DNA of 64,000 nt, taken from NCBI RefSeq assembly GCF_000150275.1, contig NW_002060963.1:529262-593261 (forward strand). Reading direction: 5' to 3'. Of this stretch, positions 3,001 through 29,790 are shown piece by piece; positions within the stretch are counted from its first letter, which is position 1; each line of letters starts with the position of its first letter. The notes under the pieces were generated by a model. The model had not been told where the DNA came from. It did not search any database and was given only the letters and a program-made list of their open reading frames with translations. Source of the stretch: Trichoplax adhaerens. Taxonomy: Eukaryota > Animalia > Placozoa. The position numbers were made by a program, and so were the translations under genes.

Positions 3001-6000
3001 TATATATAAATTATTTGATAAATCTCCCTCTTATTTATATGTATTTTATTTACAATTAATAAAGATTATGACGCTTACAGTAATTATTACTCTGTCGAAA
3101 CCAGAATAGTAATTGTTCTATTTTAGTATAATGAAAACTTGTATAAATGGAGGTAGCTAACTCGTATCTTGTCTTGCATCCGCTGTAAAAAAAGCATCAA
3201 TCAAACCCTAATCACGCGATTACACACGTATTACACTATGATTTGCTGTGCAATTCCATCAACGACAGTTTGCTTTTAATACGAGATATAATAGAACGGA
3301 GATAGCTCATGACATAGACTTGACAGTGACAGTATTATTTATAATTTATCAACGGTATGTTTATGAATATTTAGGATTTAAATAAATAATACTTATAGGT
3401 AAATATAAGATAATATATTCCTCTAGGTTTTACTGAATAGCGTTGGAAAAGATCGAATAACGTCAGTTCATGGGAACTCAACCAACGTAAGAGAAAATAC
3501 TATAATAAATTTAATCCTTGCTAAACTCTAATTATTAAGTTATTATCATACATTATTTGCAACTATAGCTGACTAACTTATTTACGATTCTAGTAAATCA
3601 TGTAGACAATAAACGGTATTATTTCTTCTAACATATTTGGTACGGGATAGCTCATTGTAAAACTCTATATTACAGTATGTTTCTAGTGATAAGCTACTAC
3701 GTGATACTACATGACACTGTTAGAAAACATTCCCTCATATATTTCAGGTAAATATTGAGGACATGGTGCTACATTCAAAAATTTCATAGTAGCTAACTTT
3801 TAGCTACATGACATTTACTAAAATTAATGAATAGTAATAAGAATAATACACCATAAAAGAGCACGGTCTTGGATAGTAATTACCGGGGATAATTGATTAT
3901 GTATATAATAGTTAAGCAAGTTTTTAATTTAAGGCATTAAGTACTATTATTAAATTGTAATTGTTGACGATTTGATAAGGCTCTTAAATAAGTTAAGCAA
4001 ACCTTGGCTGAGATATAAGCAGTCATTAATACGTCAAAAAAATAAATATAGCCAAATTGACTTAATGTATATAGAACCGAAGATAAGTTTACTTACAAAC
4101 TCTTCGAGGCGATTACGATAAGTTTTACTCATTTTTATCGTACTCTTTGAGTACCTTATGATCAATTCGCTGTATCGCAACGCCAATTAGTATTTATCGA
4201 TGAGGATCAATAGCTAATGTAAAAGAAATTTTTAATGTAAATATGTATCTTATAAGAATATTTACGAACGATTCGAAATATTAAAATATAAAAAACGCGA
4301 TGGTGTAGAAGTTTAGCTAATTCAAACATCAGAGTCTAGCTCTATTACCTGGTATTCATTAGCTAATAAGAAAGTATTTGTATCTCTTTAAGGGATTGTA
4401 TCATGGTTAAACGGTATATTATAGTTAAAAACCTACGTTTATCAAGGTTAACATAAGCCTGATGGGCAATCATGTGGCAATAAAATGTTAGCTATGTGTG
4501 TACTAATAACTAAAATCTCTTAATAATATTTTACAAAGATTCGATAGTCAATACTTGTATAATTTATTAACGGAATGAACATGTATGATATTATAGAATT
4601 ATAACTATGATACAAACTGGTACTGCAATTTTTTCATGGTATTACGAACTTACTCTAGCGAATGGATTCAAGAGGCATAATTAATGTTCTCTTTAAGAGT
4701 TAAAATACTTTTATTCATCTTACTTGGTAAAAATATCTTTAGAATGTTTCTAAGTTCATCAATTTCCCCGGTTGCGCTGATATAGTATAATAGTAGAAAT
4801 TAATAATATTCTGTTGCTACGAGAAAATTTCGTAAAGTATTGCATAATAGGCAATTTTCATTTTATGTTAGTATATACTTTTGTGCTAGTAATGTAATAC
4901 GATCTCCTTAATTGCGTGCTTATACACTTTTAAACTGTCACTTTAGTGAGTAATATTCAGTACTATCGGGCTACCCAGGGTAGTTAGCTAGTTGATTTGC
5001 AATGGAACCAGACTAGTGCATGTAAACCATTAAAAGTAAATTTTAGACTGCAAACTATCCCATATTCTAACAATATAAGAGTATATCACCTATAAGTATA
5101 ATAATTAATGAGCATTGATGATTTGACCCTCTGATGTGCAATTCATATATATAGTATGAAATTAAAAATGTCACTCATAAATGAAGATAATAAGTATGCC
5201 ACTGTATTGTCCTGTAAATTAACAGTAAATGAACTCTTGCTAAGATTGTACTACCGGCATTTTACATACGTTGAAATACATAAGTCACAAATGAAATTTC
5301 TATGCCGGTAAACGCTAATTTATTGAATACACGACAGAGTCTTATGATGTGACTCCGCCAAGGTTACGGTGTGTTCACATAAATGCTTCCTTTTTTACAA
5401 TCCATAAATGCCCACAAGTTAGACTCGGATTTTTTTGATTAACTGCAAACTGCAAGTTGAATTTAGGTGGAACATGCATAGTAGCCTGCGATGATACAAA
5501 AACAAACGAAATAAGTAACTTACTTACGAAGGAATGGATAAAGGAATATCCTTTATTACCAGTATTTGTCAGTTACATTATTACTTTTCAAGTTTCTTTA
5601 GATTATGTATATTATACTATGATTTTTTTCTTAGTATAAACTTCAAATACGCCATATTTTACGGCAAATGTGCAGTCGGCATAACTTTATAGCGATACAA
5701 CGATAACAAATCTATATCACTTAATAGTGCCAGCTATAATCTTAATTGATTTATAAGCTACATTATAACTTTCCAGTTGTTGTTAATTAAATGAGATAAA
5801 TGCTGTATTCGTAATAAAATAACTAAGCATCTTTATTGCGAAATATTTATTAATTATCTATGAAATGCTTCTTACTTCGTATCGTAGATGCTGCATTTCT
5901 TATAAGCATTCAGCAGGAAGGCATGTGATGTAACTACGACAGGTCTATATTGCTGTATGGTATTAGCTACAATATATAATTAATTCTTTCTGCAATCAAC

Positions 6001-18418: not shown

Positions 18419-21400
18419 ATGGATCGTTACTTAACTTGTCCACTATGCCAGTATTATTTTAATCATCCTGTTATTCTCCCTTGTGGCCATAGTGTCTGCT
18501 TAAAGTGTGGCCAACGCGTGCAAAAAAGCATCGCTACTGCATCACCTGGTCTTCGTGCTAAACGAGCATCTTTACCTAGTCTTCATTATGGCGACGGTGG
18601 ACAGGTAACGCGTAGTAAGTCAGTCGATCTGATGGTAACTTCCATCGTTTGCCCAGTTTGTGTCAAGAAAAATATCTTGGCCGATCGAGGCGTTCAAGGA
18701 CTTGCTAGGAATTGCATGTTTGAAGCATTAATTGATAAGCTTAAAAATCAGAAAATTAGCCAAATGAATGATTGCCAACTGTGCGAGAAAACGCCACCAA
18801 CACAAGCTACTCGCTATTGCGAGCAATGCCACATTGCTTACTGTGATAACTGTTGTGCAGTTTGCCATCCTAAGCGTGGACCACTTGCCAATCATACGTT
18901 AACCATCATCGCTAAATCTCCTGTAGAAGAATACCGACACAAACAACTCAACCCTTGCGCTCATCATCCTAATCAATTGGTCAATATGTTTTGCGCTACT
19001 TGTTCCGTTTTAATCTGCTGTAAATGCTTAGAAGTTGGAGGCCATTCAAGCCATGATACTCGCAGTTTAGATGTGGTTTGCAAGAAGCAAAAGGTATGTT
19101 CTCCAAGTAGTACACGATCTTCTACCATTTTACTGTATTTTATTTTGAATGGACTGTCTTCAAAACAGGACCATGCCAATCTTGTTAATTTCAATCGAGT
19201 TGTTTCAAGACAGTAGGAAACAAATCTTACTTTGAATCGGGTAATTTTAATACAAACAACAGCAATCTTATTTTCAAACCAGCAGCTTCAATACAGTACG
19301 AGATTGTTGTATGTCTCACTTTCCATCAAGTAGGTTAATGGTCAATCATTTTCCTTCGAATCGGCTAGCTTCCATGTCACAATACCAATCTTATTTTCAA
19401 TCCAATCGTGTAGGTTCGATTTAGCAACGCCGATCGTCTTTTCAATCGACTAGCTTAAATAGAACAACACCAATCTTATTTTCAATCAGCTACTGTCAAT
19501 ACAACGATGCCAAGTTGACTTTGAATCTACCAGTTTAAAACTGCCTATCAATACACAACGATCGTATCGAAAAAATGGATACAAAAACACATCAGTTCTA
19601 CAGTATACTAGACGTTCGCGTATCCAATGGCATCATCGATAAGTACACTTGCAGTGGGTTCAAAATGAATCATTCCACCTATTCCATCGGTAGAATAAAA
19701 TAAATCAACGATGATGAACTTTCCAATTTTGAAACATGGACAACAGCCATGTATTGACTTAGTTTCACTTCTATCCAGTAAGAGTAGATGACGGTCATCA
19801 TCATCATCAGTTCCTACTGATCCATGATTCATTTATAACATGGACGGTAATTTCTAGTTTATTTTCTAAAACAGTAACTTTATTTCCTCTACCCGAGACG
19901 ATATTTGACAATCATGACGTCAAATTGTTGTCGATTTTACACTGATGACTTTCCTCAACTTTTGCCTATTGATGCTACACAAAAACCTGCAAGATTGTTT
20001 TCCTTTTTCAATTTTTCTACTGTCTACATGAAATGAATTGCTGTTTCAATACTGTACTGTGCTATGTTTGCGTTAATAATGTGGAAAGCATTGTTTAAAA
20101 ATGATTGGGCGTTTTGTACTGTTATAGAATCCCTTTTTATTTCTTGTATAGTTGCAAGGATATTTTCGGCATGATGTTGATTAGGACCAATCGTACCTTT
20201 TACAAGGTTTTTTTCAACTCTTTTACAAAATTGATTGCTTCAACTTTCATCAATCCATTGAAAACTAGGCCAGAAGTAGTCACAACATTTCATTTTTGTT
20301 ATCTTTGCCAAATTTTTGAATAAATAAATAATTTTATCTTTTCATGGCAGGTTAAAATTATAGTATAATGATAGCAATCATTTCTTGATATTTAAATACA
20401 TTTACAGTAGCGATGCAATTTTTTTTCTTGATGGTTTATTTTGGGGAAATCTCACTTGCCATTTTACACTCTATCGTTAATCATGCCAAACTGGTTGATA
20501 ATGGTCGTACCCTTCTTGGAGAATTGTACCAAACTGTCTAATGAGGGTAACATAGAATGCATTATGAAGTAATGATTGAAAAGAAATGCCTTCACCAGGG
20601 CTAGCATAATATCCGATGGAAGTCATATTTCATCAACATAACTGGAGAGTAGACACTTGAAATGTTTTTTACACGGATCATTTTGTCAAATAGCTAAAAA
20701 ATGAAGAAGAAAACAATAGTATTGCACTGTGATGACATTCTCGTCTCCATTTTGTCACAATCCTCACATTCAATACCATAATTGTTTAGTGTTTTTTTAC
20801 CTTCGATCTAATCCCTCTACTATAGTCGGTTATTGAAGTGTTTAAATAGCAATCAAGCGGCCTTCCAATGGATTTTTTTTATAGCACATTGTGTTGTGTA
20901 CCTCGTAGGAATTTTTATCAGGATCGCATGATGCAGTCATCATCATTATTCATAACGAATCAAGTCACGATGGAAGTAATTCATGCTTTAGATAATGTAA
21001 CTGATTCCAGTACTTCCACTTCACTAGAATATCAACAACGACTAGCAGATACAAAATGACACCAGCTGAATATACAGTAGAAAAGATATTTCCACTTCTC
21101 TATGTTAACTCAGCCGGGAGAACATCAAATCGACCAAGAAGTGGTGTACCAGAACATCACGGAAATGTAGTCATTGCTTTTTTTATTTTCCAATTGCAAG
21201 GGAAAATGGCGTCGCGCCGTACTATGCCCTTTCTGAAGTACCTTTTATCCATTTCGAGTGAAACGATATTGTCATTTCTATTCTAGTAGTAATGTCTAAG
21301 TCTACAAGATTATTTTACGGCAATTTCATATCATGACATGCACCTGTTTTAAGCCATTATACCGTTATGATTTTACGATGCAGTTCTACATGCAAAACGT

Positions 21401-24400
21401 CTTGCGGCACTATAACATTTTTTCATGCAATGCTTATGCAACTATTCAATGGAGACTAGCGATAGACCTTCCTAAATCTCCAGCCTCTAGTGGTCATGAC
21501 TAAAAGTACGTATTGTATACCCAACTGGGTGCTTTAATTTTTAATCATTCCTTTTTAGCCGCCAAATCAACGTTGTCAATCTCCAACGGAGAATAAAGGG
21601 ACGTTCATAGTGGACTTGCATTAGGCCCAGACTACGATATTGTCTCATTCTTATTATTAATGGCTAGTCCATTTTAGCTCTATTTCCTATCTTGTATAAC
21701 TTTTTAAACAACTTTTTAATCTCGCTATCCACTGCAATATCGTGTCCAAGCTGATAGAAAATTACAAATCATCCTGTATTCAAATAACTAGTTCTCGACG
21801 GGATGACCAAGTCAATAAACGATGAAAAATTAGACAGCCACATTTTATGTCGACTGTAGAGCGATTCTCTTCTCTCCGGGGGTGATAGCCTTGCAAGATC
21901 CTGACTAATGTTAGCTTATGAGTCATAGGCAATTTACGGTAAAAGGAATCGTCAAGACAATCATTTCTTTGTAAAGCAACATAGTAGACGAGTTAAAATA
22001 ACACTGCCATTAGCGTTTTACAACAATTGGATAGTACAATTTTCTCCTGCATGCCCACAGCGGACAACCCATACAACGGAAGCTTTACTGCTAAATTGAA
22101 AGGTTTCCGACATCTTTGTCTTTGCCCTTCCTCATAGAAAGATACTTTAAAGTATACGAATATAATCATTAAGACTTGGCTAAAAGGTTTCACTATGATT
22201 CACGTGGAGAAGAGTTTTTTTATCACCTTTTTCGTTTCTAGGCAATGACGATAATTCTGACGTAATTTGCTTTCGATTCTATACATCATAGCAAGACATT
22301 AACTGATCTCCTTTAGGAGTCATGTCTTTATTATAATCAACTACACCATGATTCTATATTAACTAATAGATTAGCGTATGGCATTGTTATATTATTCAAG
22401 GCTAGAAAAGAAAAGTAATATACGATAGGTAGAGTTAATGGTGATAATCCACTGTTCTAAAACGAAAAAAAGGTAAACTACTGTAGTCATGGCTACACAT
22501 GTTGATGTGCAAGGCTAACACAACGCAATCGATCACATTGATCATGATCTTCCATTACTGAGTAACTGGCTTTAAAGCACATTTTTTACGTCCTGTTTTT
22601 CATTGCAAAACGAATAAAAATAACCTAGAAAAGAAGTTGGTTGGTGGAAGAGATCATGAATAAAAATGAATCATGATATCCTTACAGTATCGCTTGCTTT
22701 AGGGTATAGTTTTTTCGTCCTGATCTTCATTCCAAGCGAATAAAAAATAAATAATAACTTAGAAATGGATTGATGGGGAATAGAAATAGTCGATAAAATC
22801 AATCATGATATCCTATTACTTTACTGTATATGCTGCTGCTTTAAAGCATCATTTTTATATCATCTTCTTTTATTACAAACAAATAAAAAGAATACAACCC
22901 AGAAATGAAACTGGTTAATAAGAAAGAAAAATAGTAGACAATGCCAATTATATATTATCATTTCCGACTGCAGCATCAGTTGCTTTAAGTTTTCTTCTCC
23001 TGCGCTCATTTACCATTGCGAAACGAAAAAAAAATAACATAGAAATAAAGTTGGCTCATAAGAAAGAAAAAGACAGGATAAAATTATTCATGATATACGG
23101 TATAGTCTTACCATTTAACATTGCAAAACGAATAAAATAGTAATCGAGAAACAAAGTTGATAAATGGAAGAGAAATGGAAGCTACCCTCTTCCAAATCGA
23201 AAGAAACATTAATTAAACAAATCATATTTGATGAAGTTAAAACTACCGCTTTTACTTCGTACATAATGAATACGATAATAACTTGGTTTAATATTCCTCC
23301 TTATTTAACTTTTACTCCCTTGATTAGCAGTAATTGACTGAAATTGCTTAAATGGAATAGAACTATTATTGATTTTACTTATGCTAATTACTGTATCCAA
23401 AGTTGAATGACAATGGTGATCGCTTCTTTTTGAAATGCGCTTCTAGACTAATACTCAAGCCAACTTAAATATTCTGAAGACCAACGTGAACGATTTACAA
23501 ATATTTATTGGAGAGCTAACCGAATGTTACCAACAATATGAGGTATGAATACCTAGAAACGACATGCTTGAAATAGAGCTACAATCTATAGAGTTTTGAT
23601 ATGCAGCTAGAAATAGTTTGCTTACATACTCTTATTAAAGTAGCCATTTCTGTCAACTAATTCGTATAATCATTGATGGCGTAAGTGATCCAACAATGGA
23701 AATAATTGTCTCTTTACAACAACGTTTTACTCCATCTATACAACTTATATCGTATTAAGCATAAAATAATATGCGTCTCCCTTTACTCTTTCATGTTTTG
23801 CAGATCTCCAATCTTGATTTAGAAGCCTCAATAGCCGCTCAATTTGACTTATTAATTAATCAATTACAAAAGAAGAAAGAGAAAATGCTATCGGATATAT
23901 CGAATCAACAGCGTGAACAGTTGGAAAGTCTTAGTCTACAAAATAACTCTTATAAGCAAAAATTAGAAGATGCATCGGTCCTCGTTAGCTTCATTGACGA
24001 ATGCTTAAAAACCAATGATTGCGGCAGTTTCATCCAGGTAAGCCATTACCATGTATATGATATTCTATTGTGATGGCAACAATCTCATTTTGATTTTATC
24101 TATCATCCTTCTACTATAGGTGGCGGATAATCTAAACACCAAGTACGTACAATAGACTCTTCTACTTTTTACTTTAATTTTCATGCAATCCGATTTATAG
24201 TGATCTATTACATGACTCATTTCCAGTAATAAGATCGTCTTCTATTGTATATTATTAGTAATGCCTCGCTTGCTTCTTACTCTTTGTCAACATAATAGGA
24301 TTAACGATGCCTTGGCGACATGGAAAGACGAGATTGTTTATGAAGCAGCAGTGGAGCCGCCATTGGACGTAGTTTTAGATTCTAAGGCATGTCAAAAGGC

Positions 24401-25468
24401 CGTTACTGAACTTTGCTTCATTCAAAAAAGTGGTAAGTGCCCCTAAATAAGGCTGTGTATTGTGAGTTTTAACAATTATCAAATAGGATGTAAAATGCGT
24501 ATCACTCGTTGTATATGTTGAATTCATGCTAAGCAAAGCTAATTAAATTAAGGAAAAGACTTCTAAAATGTTATTCTAATTTAATTAGTCCCTATGCAGC
24601 CTGAAATTATTGCTGATGAATGTCGTATGTCCAATAATAACCTTACCGTCTGTTGGAGACCACCTAAAAATTGCCAAGTGGAAGGCTATATCTTAGAATT
24701 GATGGAAGATGGCCAAACAAAGTATAAAGAAATCTACCGTGGTAGAGAATGCAAATATACAGCTAGAAACTTGCATTTCGATACTACTTATAATGCTCGT
24801 GTCAGAGCCTATAATAAAGCTGGTATCAGTGAACAAAGTGTTGAAATCTGTCAAGGAACAACACCTAAAGGTAAATTTCATCAATGAACTCTCCCCTTTT
24901 CGTTTGGTATTGGTGTCACTAACATCAATTTCTTTCTTTTACAGTAATGCATTTTATCGTCGATGATGCCTTAGGCCACCCAGACATTAAACTCTACAAT
25001 GATAATACCGTGATTACATGTAGCAATAGTCAAGATAGAGTAATACTTGGCAGCGTTGGAGTTTCACGAGGTGTCCATTACTGGGAAGTATGCATTGATC
25101 GATACGTTGGAGATCCGGATCCTGCGGTTGGTGTAGCATATCTTGATGCCAACAGGGATTCAATGCTTGGACGAGATACCAAATCGTGGGCAATGTATGT
25201 TGATAGCTCTAGAAGTTGGTTTAAACACGATAATGTCCACACCAATCGTTGTGAAGGTGGAGTAACCACTGGCTCAACTGTAGGCGTCCTCTTAGATATG
25301 GACAGAGGCTTGGTGCGCTTCTATATTAATGGTGAGCCACATGGCCCAGTAGCATATAAAGGATTAAGCGGTACCATCTATCCAGCATTTAGTTTAAATA
25401 ATAAGGTACAAATGAGTATTCGTACTGGTTTATCGATTCCTTCCAATTATTTAATTAGTACAAAATAG
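18419..25468 (+). CDS. TRIM9: TRIM9/TRIM67-like E3 ubiquitin ligase (RING, B-box1, B-box2, coiled coil, FN3, SPRY)
   Basis: Exons ~18419-19093, 23447-23542, 23804-24037, 24120-24142 (23-nt microexon), 24299-24432, 24589-24870, 24944-25468. RING CPLC...LPCGHSVCLKC; B-box1 CQLCE...CEQC...CHPKRGPLANH; B-box2; FN3 EIYRGRE...TTYNARVRAYNKAG; SPRY LGSVGVSRGVHYWEV...DPAVGVA...MLGRD...WAMYVD. Confidence 0.93.
19170..19540. repeat. Degenerate ~37-40 bp tandem repeat in TRIM9 intron 1
   Basis: Repeated CAATCTTATTTTCAATC-like core at ~19177, 19221, 19263, 19386, 19431, 19471, 19511. Confidence 0.6.
22540..23180. repeat. Degenerate ~105-145 bp tandem repeat (~5 copies) in TRIM9 intron 1
   Basis: Recurring CATTGCAAAACGAATAAAA...AGAAA...GTTG...TCATGATAT blocks at ~22601, 22728, 22871, 23014, 23119. 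Confidence 0.7.
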
Positions 25469-26221
25469 TATTGTAGTGTATTGGTTAATTACTTTAAATG
25501 GATTTTATGATAACATTAATTTCTTATCATGTTGAATTTAAATCAATCACGGTGCTGTAAATGTTTTCGTATCTTTTGCAATACAAAGTACTCGTAATGT
25601 CAAGCAAAGTAGTTCCACGACAGCTTCTATAGCTATTATTGTTGCTATAATCTAGTTTTACGCTTTTATTTGCATCAATGGACAGTCGCAGATGTAAAGT
25701 ATCATAAAAATTATACTTAATAATAGTATTATAATGTCAAAGTTAATCATTGTAGAGTGATATAGATGACCTTGTAAATGTCATCATACTCAGCTTTATT
25801 GGCTAATCTGATATAGCCGTCTCAAAAAATTTTATTTCAAACGTATAGACGTTGCTTAGATCACATGTCTACTTATTATTATGGATTGTTGTATTCCATA
25901 TTTACTGTAGCAGTTATTGTAACTATTAAATGATGTAAGAAAATAATCCTATTTTTTTTTGGCCTTGGCTATGGTATTGTCCATTCTTATGGTAACGGCC
26001 ATTAAGAATGCATTATTAATTGCGTCATAGTAGATCACAATTTGTCGTAAAAAATTGAACTTTAAATTATCAAAGATTTTACGGAAATCACAAGTTTTAT
26101 TTAAGAGTCATCTTTTAGGCTTGCTTTATACCATCATGTATACGTCTAGACGATGTATAATAATCTTAAACTTCTAGACATCAATAACAATGGGTGTTGT
26201 GAAGTTTGATAAGATTTCTTC

Positions 26222-26270
26222 ATCAAAACTGAATATGTGATAATACAACACTTTACATTCAGTTTGTCAT
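26222..26270 (-). promoter_or_regulatory. SECIS element (type II) in the selenoprotein L 3'UTR
   Basis: Minus strand reads ATGAC-AAACTGAATGT-AAA-GTGTTGTATTATCAC-ATATTCAGTTT-TGAT: AUGAN/NGAN core, 11-bp helix II (one G-U pair), unpaired AAA, and an apical GTG/CAC mini-stem. Confidence 0.92.
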
Positions 26271-26582
26271 GTGCTCTACCTTTCTTCACTGCACCACCTG
26301 TTAAAAGTTAAAAAACATTATTTCACTTCGCTGCCTAAAAGAAAAATGTTGCATGATCTAATGATAAGTAATGACATAAATATTTAACTTAATTTCAAGT
26401 ACTTTTTGAAAATTAATAAAAGATTATTAATTTACTAATGTCATATGTGTCGCTTATGATGGTGTGATTGTAGTAACATTGCTATGCATTCCAGAATGGG
26501 TTTAATGGTACAAGAGGATCAATAATATAGAGTAATCTAATAAATTCTCGTCTTTATCAAATCTTTCTAAATTACAAATTAC

Positions 26583-29549
26583 CTATAAGTACGACAATAA
26601 TGTAGCTATCTTTGGCCGATCAGGCGGAGTTTTGCTACAATATACAAGAGTCATCTCGCCATTGGAACCAATAATAAAGTCTCCTCCCATCTATGTGTAG
26701 ATAAAGTGGTTAGAATTTATTTCCTTAATGTAGAATTTCATGATAGCTATTGTCAGAAGTACAGATACAGACTTAAGGTTTTAATCCCTAACTTATTACA
26801 ATGACTTACTTGATTTGGATCGTCATCTTTTACCATTTTATATAAAGATCGACCGCAACATTTCTGCTCAGCATAGTATGTCATAGTTGTTGTAGACCAA
26901 ACCTTTAACAGAATCCATAGGTTAATAACTGCAAATTATTGCCAATTCGATTATTAAGATATATGGCTTTATAGAACACAAGATTACGTCATGCGTAAGC
27001 TACAAAGATTACGAATCAAGCTGTATAACAAATACATGATACCTTAGCGACGGACTGTCTTAAACCGAATGCTTCATATATCTGTATTGTTAAATAAATA
27101 AATGATTTCTTCTTATCAACTTAATAGAAATTATAAGTATTATCATTTATTTTTACAGGCTATGTAAAGAGTATACAAAATATTTCTTTCGATAGATACA
27201 ACGCCAGATGTGGATACTAGTGACCTAATTTTTACTTTGAACGATTACATAATCTCAGTGAGTAACAACTACTATTTAGCGGCCAGAGATTTGACGATAG
27301 AGTAATACCTTCCTATCGGAATCCATTAGCATCGGATAAGTGGCTTGAGTTTCTTCAAGCCATTGTAAAGCACCAGCCTATCAACATAAATTAAAACACG
27401 TCATTTGCACAGGCTTTGACAAGATCAAGCTATCTTAAGACATACCTGAGAACCAAACGTGATCAAAATAGTCTTTGTATTAGCAGCATCAAACATAGCC
27501 TAGGGAAATAATTCAAACAAAAATTAGCAAGGTAAGCTATATGCTGATATGAATGTATTTAGGTATCAACCTTTTACTGATCATACTACTCTAATATTAT
27601 TTTCTTTTATAAGGAATGTTCTTAATACAGTTATCAGCAATAATTCAACAACTATAGCACTATCACCTGATTCCGCTGTAGTTCGGCTACGTGATCACGT
27701 CAGGGCAGTCACGCAAAGTGTCTCAAAAGAATTAACAGCAATGATTTTCCACTTTCCATGAAATCTGATAAATTTACTTGGCTGAAATCCATCAAATGAT
27801 ATTGTTAGATCAGAAAATTATGCAAGATCCAATGGTATGTTGTATTCATTTCCAGTACTCTATCTAACAAGATGATTTATGAATATTGCATGAACTTTCG
27901 TATCTCTAACCTAGATGTACGAACATCGATCAATGGAACATGCAATGGTGCTACAGATCCGACAGTAGAACTAGATTGAGGCAATCCATCACTCTTATTG
28001 TGGTCCATTTTACGATCAACGTCTTTTAAAAAAGTGTTCCAGTTATCCTATGAGGTAACCCAAAATTTATTAGTAAAAATTGCGTAGATAATTAATGAAG
28101 TATTTATTTTATGCTGTTAAAACTTTATGCTATATCTAACTATTAGTACCATTTAGGACCAGCCTATTGAATTTGATATCATGTAATGTTATTATTCTTA
28201 CTTCGACGTCAAATAATTCATCTACGGCATCACGAACTTCAGGAATCCTAAAACATTTCAGTATCTCTATTAAAGACTTCCTAAATTTAGACTGCCGTAT
28301 GCACAATAAGCGGGATAATAAAATAATATCAATTTGGAAAGATATAACAAGCTTTATACATATTCTGCGGGATAGGATAACAGGTATTAGTCCCTATGTA
28401 TTGCATTCACTGATATGACAGCTATATCTACATACGTAAATCCCAACTATACAAACGTTAACGACAGATATTTTATAAGAAACACGATAGCTACTAATTT
28501 TAAAGGTCAAGAGGCGGTTAAGGGTTAGTAGAATAGCTTGAGAGAATCTAGTAATATATCTATTACAATAACATTTGTTCGAATAAACTTAATGTGTTAG
28601 GATAAAATTAATTACAATATCCGATAAATTACCGATAATTTTCTTTGCATGTATTTTGCAGATCTAGGTGGGACTTTACAGATAATCTGAGTGTAGGCAA
28701 GAATTTATCAATGTTTGTATAAGAAATAGATTTATCCTTAGATAATAACATAATTTAACGGCTTCAGGTAGCCCTATAAAGTGCAAATATCTACTACTGT
28801 ATGCTAGGCATATACACAGTTCTACGTGTATGTATACTATTTTCATTAGCATAGGAGTAATTAAGCTATAACAAGAAGCTAGATTACTTTTTAATGCAGA
28901 ACTAAACTAAGTTAAATGTTTCCAAATTCGAGAGAAGTTGATAGCTGTAATTCATACTGTTTCTGTGCATAAATTATTACAGTCTAACTGACAATTTTTT
29001 TCTATGTTTAACCTGTACCTATTAAATGCTTCAGCATAAAGTCCAATAGCGGCTCCTAACTTATTGACATGATTATTTACAAAATCCCCAATCGACTCTA
29101 TTAAGGTGTAAAATAATAGAAAAGATGATTTATGCATGTTGTCTAATACGTTTCACAATAATGGAACATTATTGATCATAGACAATTACTTGGCTAGTAA
29201 AATGCTGGTAAATCTCTCTTTCTATACTAAATAAAAACTTCAGTGCTAATTTTATATATCATATCGATGATGAGAATTACTATTAACACTTTACTATTTA
29301 CCTTTATAATACTGCTTGTATACTGTATAAAATTACAGTAGATAGACAACGAAAGATGGCAAGTTTTACTTCAATACAGTAATAGCACATAATTATCGTC
29401 TACGATACTTTATAATAACTCAAGCAATAGCATATTATATACACACCAATGATTGAGAACTTTTCTTGAACTCCTGCTAACGTTTTATTTAATCCTTCAG
29501 CTAGCTGTTGTACTTCCTGAGCTATCTTACATGCCGTATCGGATGCCAT
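26583..29549 (-). CDS. SELENOL: Selenoprotein L (thioredoxin/AhpC-like fold, UxxU motif), 11 coding exons, 298 aa
   Basis: Phase-consistent GT-AG exons 29549-29447, 29097-29019, 28686-28633, 28247-28202, 28047-27911, 27781-27667, 27499-27446, 27377-27309, 27081-27043, 26902-26810, 26690-26583. Translation includes LLLILLRHFA-TGA-LP-TGA-RDHVAEL, ILITFGSQAGALQWLEET, DSDRKIYEAFGL and DDPNQMGGDFII...SKTPPDRP. SECIS is present downstream. Confidence 0.93.
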
Positions 29550-29790
29550 GTTGTAATGGCATCCGCCTGCTACTATAGCCCCTTTTTTCAACTTCAATCC
29601 AGTACAGATAATCCTACAAAATCAAGACACTATCTAAATCATCGCTTGCATCAATAAGCTACTAATCATAACATTTTAGACCTAAGCTTTACCTGGAAAC
29701 AAGATTAGTTTGCAAAGATGCAGTAAATGGAGCTCGGTCTGGAAAGGAAATTATTAATTTATTCTATACAGAAGCCTTTTTGTTCGCGCT

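What the first reader, a model, noticed from the sequence alone, without database searches (positions are those of the whole stretch)
26583..29549. Hidden double-selenocysteine gene: selenoprotein L with an in-frame UxxU motif
Seen: a complete 11-exon, phase-consistent minus-strand model (298 aa) with two TGA codons at 27709-27711 and 27700-27702 in RHFA-U-LP-U-RDHV (U164, U167), the position of the thioredoxin-fold CxxC. The frame continues through five further exons with family-like sequence. Established: SelL is the selenoprotein family with a UxxU motif able to form a diselenide bond, with a patchy distribution in aquatic organisms and absent from mammals. Inference: standard gene callers would truncate, split or skip this exon, so it is probably mis-annotated in this genome.
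Basis: partly seen in the sequence, partly recalled or inferred. Interest (0 to 1): 0.9.

Follow-up and report, generated by a model that had tools for sequence, protein, structure and literature searches.

The report
Known Trichoplax selenoprotein L gene
This is a real, expressed gene for selenoprotein L, whose active site holds two selenocysteines encoded by TGA "stop" codons; it was reported for the placozoan Trichoplax in 2012, so the only practical news is that the public gene models still cut the selenocysteine exon out.

Summary
Two in-frame TGA codons (27711-27709 and 27702-27700, minus strand) give RHFA-U-LP-U-RDHV. Assembled RNA from three runs of three studies shows 11 GT..AG splice joints.

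A canonical SECIS hairpin lies in the 3'UTR, 27 nt after the stop codon in the mRNA. It is the only strict SECIS-pattern site in the window, against 0 in 300 random windows.

The NCBIfam model "SelL-related redox protein" hits only this gene in the 105.6-Mb genome. Two other genomes keep both TGAs in LLRH[F/S]A-U-LP-U-RDH. A sea-star homologue has CLPC there, and that motif aligns with the catalytic CVVC of solved PRXL2B.

The genome behaves as Trichoplax adhaerens. Jiang et al. 2012 (PMC3473315) already list one Ta.SelL, on the minus strand of scaffold_22. The finding is therefore already known.

XP_002117260.1 (T. adhaerens) and RDD42532.1 (Trichoplax sp. H2) both drop 111 of the 115 nt of the Sec exon and the whole 54-nt exon 3.

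This scan has already filed another selenoprotein of this genome (SelU2) as known since 2012. No search or fold of the joined exons was done.

The parts
29693..29752 (-). 5' exon, partly seen. It is spliced to 29613. Its extent upstream is unknown.
   Evidence: loose ends at 29615 of 58 nt (X14) and 27 nt (X5); those letters match the window from 29695 with one mismatch, and GT follows at 29692-29691. The same junction is used in the public model P0012.
29447..29613 (-). Exon holding the start codon: 5'UTR 29613-29550, ATG at 29549-29547, coding exon 1 to 29447.
   Evidence: joint 29097/29447. The frame is also open upstream of the ATG, so the start is not proven. The N-terminal length of sea-star P0014 fits this ATG.
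29019..29097 (-). Coding exon 2.
   Evidence: Joints. It is 59% identical to P0014 residues 40-66.
28633..28686 (-). Coding exon 3 (54 nt, 18 codons). It is missing from both public gene models.
   Evidence: Joints 28246/28632 and 28686/29019 in three runs. It is absent from P0012 and P0001.
28202..28247 (-). Coding exon 4.
   Evidence: joints.
27911..28047 (-). Coding exon 5.
   Evidence: joints.
27667..27781 (-). Coding exon 6, the Sec exon. It has TGA at 27711-27709 (U164) and 27702-27700 (U167) in LLRHFA-U-LP-U-RDHVAELQRNQ.
   Evidence: It is present without differences in spliced RNA contigs. The NF040769 match covers profile positions 7-51 with 2 TGA inside. The TGAs align with Cys of P0014 and with TGA in L009, L010 and L008.
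27446..27499 (-). Coding exon 7.
   Evidence: joints.
27309..27377 (-). Coding exon 8.
   Evidence: joints.
27043..27081 (-). Coding exon 9.
   Evidence: joints.
26810..26902 (-). Coding exon 10.
   Evidence: joints.
26583..26690 (-). Coding exon 11, ending in the stop codon TAG at 26585-26583.
   Evidence: NF040769 profile positions 139-172, E 2.8e-6. There are 11 hits in 1.84 billion representative proteins.
26298..26582 (-). 3'UTR intron (285 nt) that begins directly after the stop codon.
   Evidence: Joint 26295/26581 (cut +2) with GT..AG ends in X14, X5 and X8.
26100..26297 (-). Terminal non-coding exon. Its 3' end was not determined, because the contigs run on past 26100.
   Evidence: table 8.
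26199..26289 (-). SECIS element. Helix I is GUGAAG/CUUCAC. The core AUGA is at 26270-26267 and its UGAU partner at 26225-26222. Helix II is a perfect 11 bp. Unpaired AAA lies at 26254-26252, and there is an apical mini-stem (form 2).
   Evidence: fold; it is the only strict-pattern site in the window, with 0 in 300 random windows. It is identical in Trichoplax sp. H2.

Best explanation
This is the selenoprotein L (SelL/SELENOL) gene of a placozoan, almost certainly Trichoplax adhaerens. The mRNA has at least 13 exons, 11 of them coding, and encodes a 298-residue protein. The N-terminal ~130 residues form a region of unknown role that is conserved in a sea-star homologue. The C-terminal ~170 residues form a peroxiredoxin-like-2 (PRXL2/AhpC-TSA_2) thioredoxin-fold domain.

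Two UGA codons three codons apart are recoded to selenocysteine by a single form-2 SECIS in the 3'UTR. The SECIS lies 432 nt after the first UGA in the mRNA. The resulting U-L-P-U centre replaces the CxxC of PRXL2 proteins. It presumably cycles between diselenol and diselenide as a redox-active site, as was shown for zebrafish SelL.

Shown here: the exon structure and expression, retention of both TGAs in the mRNA, the SECIS-shaped element, conservation of both TGAs and of the frame beyond them, and alignment to Cys and then to a catalytic CxxC.

Inferred: actual Sec insertion at both codons, diselenide formation and the oxidoreductase function.
For: 1. RNA contigs of three runs from three studies show all 11 joints and contain the Sec exon unchanged.

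2. A SECIS with an AUGA...AAA...UGAU core and a perfect 11-bp helix II sits on the same strand, 27 nt into the 3'UTR of the mRNA. It is the only strict-pattern site in 128 kb of sequence (both strands), against 0 sites in 300 Markov-random windows.

3. The whole-genome six-frame search with NF040769 (SelL-related redox protein) gave only two matches, both in this gene. The Sec exon matched profile positions 7-51 with 2 TGA inside, and the last exon matched 137-172.

4. The public model that lacks the Sec exon matches profile positions 49-172 at 85 bits (E 3.8e-24), and PF13911 at 42 bits against a cut-off of 27. The skipped exon therefore supplies exactly the missing N-terminal part of the domain.

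5. Collinear exon-by-exon homologues in two other genomes keep TGA-x-x-TGA, while the flanking residues diverge on both sides: RDHVAELQRNQ versus RDHLAQLHQRQ and RDHVAMLQQHQ.

6. The Patiria miniata protein P0014 aligns LLRHFACLPCRDHVAQLQ with LLRHFA*LP*RDHVAELQ. Its CLPC aligns with the CVVC of prostamide/prostaglandin F synthase 9us9, which was mutated to Ser in 9usa.

7. The in-genome paralogue SelU1 has RRPG-U-HV-C-REEA at the same place.

8. Jiang et al. 2012 list one Ta.SelL on a minus strand.
Against: - Rfam's SECIS models found nothing, even at E<=10. They also missed the SECIS at the SelT control locus of the same genome, so this negative carries little weight.
- The folding energy of the SECIS region is not unusual for its composition (z -0.9 to -1.1).
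- Single exons gave no Pfam match.
- NF040769's curated cut-off of 120 bits is not reached.
- There is no protein-level evidence here for Sec insertion.
- Contigs cannot exclude minor isoforms that skip the exon.
- The contig number maps to scaffold_21 rather than the published scaffold_22. The rule is contig number = 1415 minus scaffold number, and it fits five other published selenoprotein genes.
Confidence: 0.93

Rival explanations
1. The TGAs are real stops, and the gene makes a truncated 163-residue protein or is a decaying pseudogene. On this reading the downstream exons are translated only in ancestors or not at all.
For: TGA is normally a stop codon. No protein data are available. Rfam found no SECIS.
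Against: - The five exons downstream are spliced in frame and conserved at 45-77% identity in other genomes that also keep both TGAs.
- Those exons carry most of the family-domain score, 85 bits.
- A SECIS is present.
- The gene is expressed in three studies.
- The sequence is identical in Trichoplax sp. H2.
Confidence: 0.03
2. The public gene models are right. The main mRNA skips the TGA-bearing sequence by using a 4-nt mini-exon, giving a 243- or 286-residue protein without a redox centre.
For: Two independent annotation projects produced this structure.
Against: - All three RNA assemblies join 27911 to 27781 and 27667 to 27499, with the full 115-nt exon between.
- No contig shows the 4-nt exon.
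- The modelled protein lacks profile positions 1-48 of NF040769, which include the active-site motif.
- Gene predictors avoid in-frame stops by design, as PMC3473315 notes.
Confidence: 0.02
3. Only one of the two UGAs is decoded as Sec. The other would cause termination, or would be read by another near-cognate tRNA, so that no diselenide forms.
For: Decoding of two closely spaced UGAs by one SECIS is inefficient in general. Nothing here measures it.
Against: Both TGAs are kept in four genomes, and both positions are Cys in the Cys-form homologue. From my own knowledge of Shchedrina et al. 2007, a paper not held in the library, zebrafish SelL inserted both Sec residues using a single SECIS.
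Confidence: 0.05

Closest known systems
Selenoprotein L (SelL/SELENOL) of fish and marine invertebrates (Shchedrina et al. 2007, PNAS 104:13919); Ta.SelL of Jiang et al. 2012 (PMC3473315)
   Same: It has a UxxU motif in a Prx-like thioredoxin fold, a single 3'UTR SECIS for two Sec codons, and comes from an aquatic animal. There is one copy in the genome, on the minus strand, as published for Trichoplax.
   Different: Nothing essential differs. The stop codon sits at the very end of the penultimate exon, so the SECIS lies in a purely non-coding last exon. The published scaffold number is one higher than the one my contig mapping gives.
NCBIfam NF040769 SelL-related redox protein (bacterial subfamily)
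   Same: The match is collinear over profile positions 7-172 of 173 and spans both TGAs.
   Different: The scores are 85 bits for the public model plus 26 bits for the Sec exon scored separately, both below the 120-bit cut-off. This protein is eukaryotic, carries an extra ~130-residue N-terminal region, and its gene is split by introns.
PRXL2 family: PRXL2B prostamide/prostaglandin F synthase (PDB 9us9), and SelU/PRXL2 paralogues of the same genome (Pfam PF13911)
   Same: The same fold family (PF13911 at 42 bits). The redox motif sits at the same place after the first hydrophobic strand: L-R-x-F-x-[C/U]-x-x-[C/U]-R.
   Different: SelL has Sec at both positions, where PRXL2B has CxxC and Trichoplax SelU1 has UxxC. 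Sequence identity is low (E 4e-5 through the sea-star homologue). SelL also has the N-terminal extension.

Membership tests
Selenoprotein L (SelL) | Two in-frame UGA codons separated by two codons (UxxU) | tested here: met
   TGA at 27711-27709 and 27702-27700, in frame and in a spliced, expressed exon.
Selenoprotein L (SelL) | UxxU lies at the position of the CxxC redox motif of a thioredoxin-like (Prx-like) fold | tested here: met
   Both TGAs align with Cys of CLPC in P0014. CLPC aligns with the CVVC of solved PRXL2B 9us9, and with the Ser mutant 9usa. The match is by sequence only, because no structure of the joined protein was predicted.
Selenoprotein L (SelL) | A single eukaryotic SECIS element in the 3'UTR | tested here: met
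   There is one form-2 SECIS-shaped hairpin at 26289-26199. It is the only strict-pattern site in the window, with 0 in 300 random windows. Rfam's model did not score it, but it also failed at a control locus.
Selenoprotein L (SelL) | Sequence homology to named SelL proteins | tested here: inconclusive
   No protein named SelL was available to the tools. The support is indirect: NF040769 'SelL-related redox protein' hits only this gene, and Jiang 2012 lists one Ta.SelL on a minus strand.
Selenoprotein L (SelL) | Both Sec residues are inserted and can form a diselenide | not testable with these tools
   This needs 75Se labelling or mass spectrometry.
Pfam PF13911 AhpC/TSA_2 (PRXL2-like) | Domain score above the gathering threshold | tested here: met
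   The public models of this gene score 42.1 and 42.6 bits against a cut-off of 27. Single exons do not reach it.
NCBIfam NF040769 SelL_rel_redox | Whole-protein score of at least 120 bits | tested here: not met
   The score is 85.2 bits without the Sec exon, and the Sec exon alone scores 26.1 bits. The joined protein was not scored. This gene is a eukaryotic relative of that bacterial subfamily, not a member of it.

The most novel reading that the evidence does not exclude
The intron placed directly after the stop codon may be a functional design rather than an accident. Under the usual rule for nonsense-mediated decay, a last exon junction this close to the stop codon would not mark normal termination as premature. 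Failure to decode U164 or U167 would leave six junctions downstream and should trigger decay, which would tie SelL mRNA level tightly to selenium supply.

The donor position is shared with an unidentified homologue (L009). There the codon before the junction is AAA (Lys) instead of TAG, so the arrangement probably arose from an ancestral coding intron.
Probability: 0.12. Interest if true: 0.4.

Novelty: already known. Interest (0 to 1): 0.15.

Why it matters
For biology it adds little, because SelL in Trichoplax was published in 2012 and the family in 2007.

The practical value is in annotation. The RefSeq/UniProt entry (XP_002117260.1, B3SAG9_TRIAD) and the Trichoplax sp. H2 entry (RDD42532.1) both lack the active-site exon and a 54-nt exon, and should be corrected. 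The RNA-supported exon coordinates given here, including the UTR intron and the SECIS, allow that.

The case is also a clean positive control for the scan. A reader without tools recovered a correct 11-exon double-Sec model from raw sequence.

Tried and rejected
- **Rfam scans.** The whole window at gathering threshold, and 24500-26700 at E<=10, gave no SECIS. I set this aside as evidence because the same library found no SECIS at three control selenoprotein loci of this genome. My pattern scan does show a SECIS at one of them, the SelT locus.
- **Pfam on single exons.** Nothing relevant came up.
- **PF13911 over the whole genome.** It did not hit this gene. The model starts after the redox motif and the exons are short. 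Its one hit with "2 TGA" (L005) is low-complexity chance.
- **My first exon model.** It had 10 exons and 280 codons, and the RNA joints corrected it.
- **My loose SECIS pattern.** It is not specific, giving 1.25 sites per random window, so I replaced it with a strict one.
- **The SelL family paper.** PMC1955791 is not held. What I say about zebrafish SelL rests on my own knowledge and on citations.
- **The joined 298-residue model.** It was not searched, scored or folded. Exons were searched one by one by reference. Whole-protein evidence comes from the public proteins P0012, P0001 and P0014.

Full report
**Observation**

The window is AT-rich (about 32-35% GC) and intron-dense. On the minus strand the sequence reads aga cac ttt gcg TGA ctg ccc TGA cgt gat cac. 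The TGAs lie at 27711-27709 and 27702-27700, inside an open frame flanked by an AG acceptor (exon start 27781) and a GT donor (exon end 27667).

From sequence alone I could build a phase-consistent model of 10 exons and 280 codons.

**Transcripts**

One stretch (26100-29700) was laid against four public runs. Three of them come from three different studies: X14, on record as RNA-Seq, plus X5 and X8. They hold spliced contigs with 11 joints, all with GT..AG ends on the minus strand.

Ten joints bound the coding exons:
- 29549-29447
- 29097-29019
- 28686-28633
- 28247-28202
- 28047-27911
- 27781-27667
- 27499-27446
- 27377-27309
- 27081-27043
- 26902-26810
- 26690-26583

It totals 897 nt, or 298 codons plus TAG, with Sec at codons 164 and 167. 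The Sec exon is present in the contigs with no differing letters.

The eleventh joint removes 26582-26298. That is an intron beginning immediately after the stop codon TAG (26585-26583), so the last exon (from 26297) is entirely non-coding.

A loose end at 29615 matches the window from 29695 with one mismatch. There is therefore at least one further 5' exon, spliced 29693 to 29613.

The fourth run (X4) gave only short unspliced low-depth pieces and looks like genomic DNA. Contigs cannot exclude rare isoforms.

**SECIS**

The SECIS core lies 27 nt into the last exon. The sequence there reads AUGA-C-AAACUGAAUGU-AAA-GUG...CAC-AUAUUCAGUUU-UGAU.
- AUGA is at 26270-26267 and UGAU at 26225-26222.
- Helix II is a perfect 11 bp.
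- Three unpaired A residues are followed by an apical mini-stem.
- An outer helix GUGAAG/CUUCAC closes the element (26289-26199).

The minimum-free-energy fold reproduces this shape. The folding energy itself is not unusual for the composition (z about -1).

A strict pattern scan finds this one site in the whole window on both strands. The pattern requires the core, an 11-bp or longer perfect helix, AA at the start of the loop, and GA on the 3' side. It found none in 300 second-order Markov random windows. A looser pattern was not specific.

Rfam found no SECIS. It also found none at the loci of three other published Trichoplax selenoproteins. At one of these, SelT, my scan and the fold show a clear SECIS about 150 nt downstream of the coding match. 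I therefore treat the Rfam negative as uninformative.

In the mRNA the SECIS core lies 432 nt after the first UGA.

**Family**

Exons were searched one at a time by reference.

- Single exons gave nothing in Pfam.
- In NCBIfam the 23 residues before the first TGA and the last exon both hit NF040769, "SelL-related redox protein". They matched profile positions 16-36 and 139-172, the last exon at E 2.8e-6.
- A six-frame search of the whole 105.6-Mb genome with that model returned only two matches, both in this gene. The Sec exon matched with the two TGAs read through (profile 7-51, 26 bits), and the last exon matched profile 137-172.

A search of 1.84 billion representative proteins with the last exon found 11 hits. 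The best (P0001) and its cluster mate (P0012) are the public models of this very gene:
- RDD42532.1, Trichoplax sp. H2, 243 residues.
- XP_002117260.1 / B3SAG9_TRIAD, TRIADDRAFT_61255, Trichoplax adhaerens, 286 residues.

Both models go from ...DVRTS through "SQ" straight to AMFDAANTK.... They keep only 4 nt of the Sec exon and use a GT inside it as donor. Both also omit exon 3.

These models match NF040769 from profile position 49 onward (85 bits, E about 3e-24) and PF13911 AhpC/TSA_2 at 42 bits (cut-off 27). The skipped exon supplies exactly the missing N-terminal part of the domain, including the redox motif.

**Do the TGAs align with U or C in homologues?**

Contigs carrying three of the other last-exon hits were fetched, plus the Trichoplax sp. 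H2 locus.
- In L009 (an ENA assembly of an unidentified organism) and L010 (a Logan contig), exon-by-exon tblastn gives collinear matches to exons 5-11.
- The Sec exon reads ...LVLLRHFA-U-LP-U-RDHLAQLHQRQ in L009 and ...LVLLRHSA-U-LP-U-RDHVAMLQQHQ in L010. Both TGAs are kept, while residues on both sides have diverged and the frame after the TGAs is preserved.
- The H2 locus is identical to the window here and in the SECIS.
- L009 also has a SECIS-shaped hairpin about 1.4 kb downstream.

A search with the public protein P0012 found a full-length homologue from the sea star Patiria miniata (P0014, 327 residues, 35% identity, E 5e-45). tblastn of P0014 against the window aligns it collinearly to eight of the exons. 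It pairs LLRHFACLPCRDHVAQLQ with LLRHFA*LP*RDHVAELQ, so both TGAs fall on Cys.

P0014 in turn matches the solved prostamide/prostaglandin F synthase PRXL2B (9us9, E 4e-5). Its CLPC sits on CVVC, the pair replaced by Ser in entry 9usa. The in-genome paralogue SelU1 has RRPG-U-HV-C-REEA at the same place.

**Which genome, and is the gene known?**

The assembly has 105,631,681 bases in 1414 contigs. The proteins identical to the window's exons are named Trichoplax adhaerens and Trichoplax sp. H2.

Jiang et al. 2012 (PMC3473315) list 28 Trichoplax selenoproteins with their scaffolds, among them one Ta.SelL on (-)scaffold_22. Five other genes of their table fall on contigs numbered 1415 minus the scaffold number, with the right strand. 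These are SelU1, SelU2_a and SelU2_b, and SelT, SelW2 and SelH_b.

By that rule the window (C1394) would be scaffold_21, not 22. The difference of one is unexplained. It may reflect one scaffold missing from this copy. Since the genome holds only one SelL-like locus and it is on the minus strand, I take it to be the published gene.

The family itself was described in 2007 (Shchedrina et al.). That paper is not held here but is cited, where SelL is called a Prx-like protein of aquatic organisms.

**Mechanism**

Shown:
- a spliced, expressed mRNA with two in-frame UGA codons
- a SECIS-shaped element in its 3'UTR
- conservation of both UGA codons and of the downstream frame
- placement of the two codons on the catalytic Cys pair of the PRXL2 fold

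Inferred from established knowledge of eukaryotic Sec decoding and of SelL: SBP2 and eEFSec recode both UGAs using the single SECIS. The U-L-P-U centre then acts as a diselenol/diselenide redox site.

The role of the conserved N-terminal ~130 residues is unknown.

The start codon is not proven. The frame is open upstream of 29549, and the JGI model adds 43 residues from upstream exons. However, the H2 model and the N-terminal length of the sea-star protein fit the ATG at 29549.

**Verdict**

The gene is already known, so interest is low. What remains useful is the correction of two public gene models and the RNA-supported coordinates.

Noticed in passing
window 26298-26582 (minus strand); L009:10100-10115: The 3'UTR intron starts directly after the stop codon (TTA TAG|GTAATT), so the SECIS sits in a purely non-coding last exon. 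In the homologue L009 the same position reads CTC AAA|GTAAGT, and the sea-star protein runs on 27 residues past this point. The intron was therefore probably an ancestral coding intron, and Trichoplax gained a stop at the exon end.
   Followed up: partly
window 29550-29760 (minus strand): The reading frame stays open upstream of the ATG at 29549, across the RNA-supported junction from 29693 to 29613. The JGI model XP_002117260.1 starts 43 residues earlier (MALKEV...) in a further upstream exon. The RNA contigs end before that ATG, so the true start is unresolved.
   Followed up: partly
window 18419-25468 (+ strand): A convergent neighbour gene encodes a RING / B-box / fibronectin-III / SPRY (TRIM-like) protein. 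Its last exon ends about 630 nt from position 26100 in the terminal non-coding exon of SelL. The RNA contigs of 2.7-2.8 kb run on past 26100, so the 3' ends of the two genes may overlap.
   Followed up: no
L012 (G000:C1404:1866500-1871500), minus strand near 4040: Rfam 15 finds no SECIS at E<=10 at the Trichoplax SelT, SelW2 or SelH_b loci. A clear form-2 SECIS hairpin is nevertheless present about 150 nt downstream of the SelT coding match. Rfam negatives for SECIS in this genome are therefore not informative.
   Followed up: yes
window 29534: There is a C>T difference on the + strand in the RNA contigs of X14 and X8. It changes codon 6 from GCA (Ala) to ACA (Thr), the residue found in the Trichoplax sp. 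H2 protein. This is a strain or sister-species polymorphism.
   Followed up: no
G000 contig numbering (C1394 versus scaffold_22): Contig number = 1415 minus JGI scaffold number holds for five published selenoprotein genes, but SelL is off by one. One scaffold between 15 and 21 may be absent from this copy of the assembly.
   Followed up: partly
L005 (G000:C1414:5973028-5973246): This weak PF13911 hit flagged with '2 TGA' is low-complexity sequence (repeated CTVLY) and not a second double-Sec gene.
   Followed up: yes
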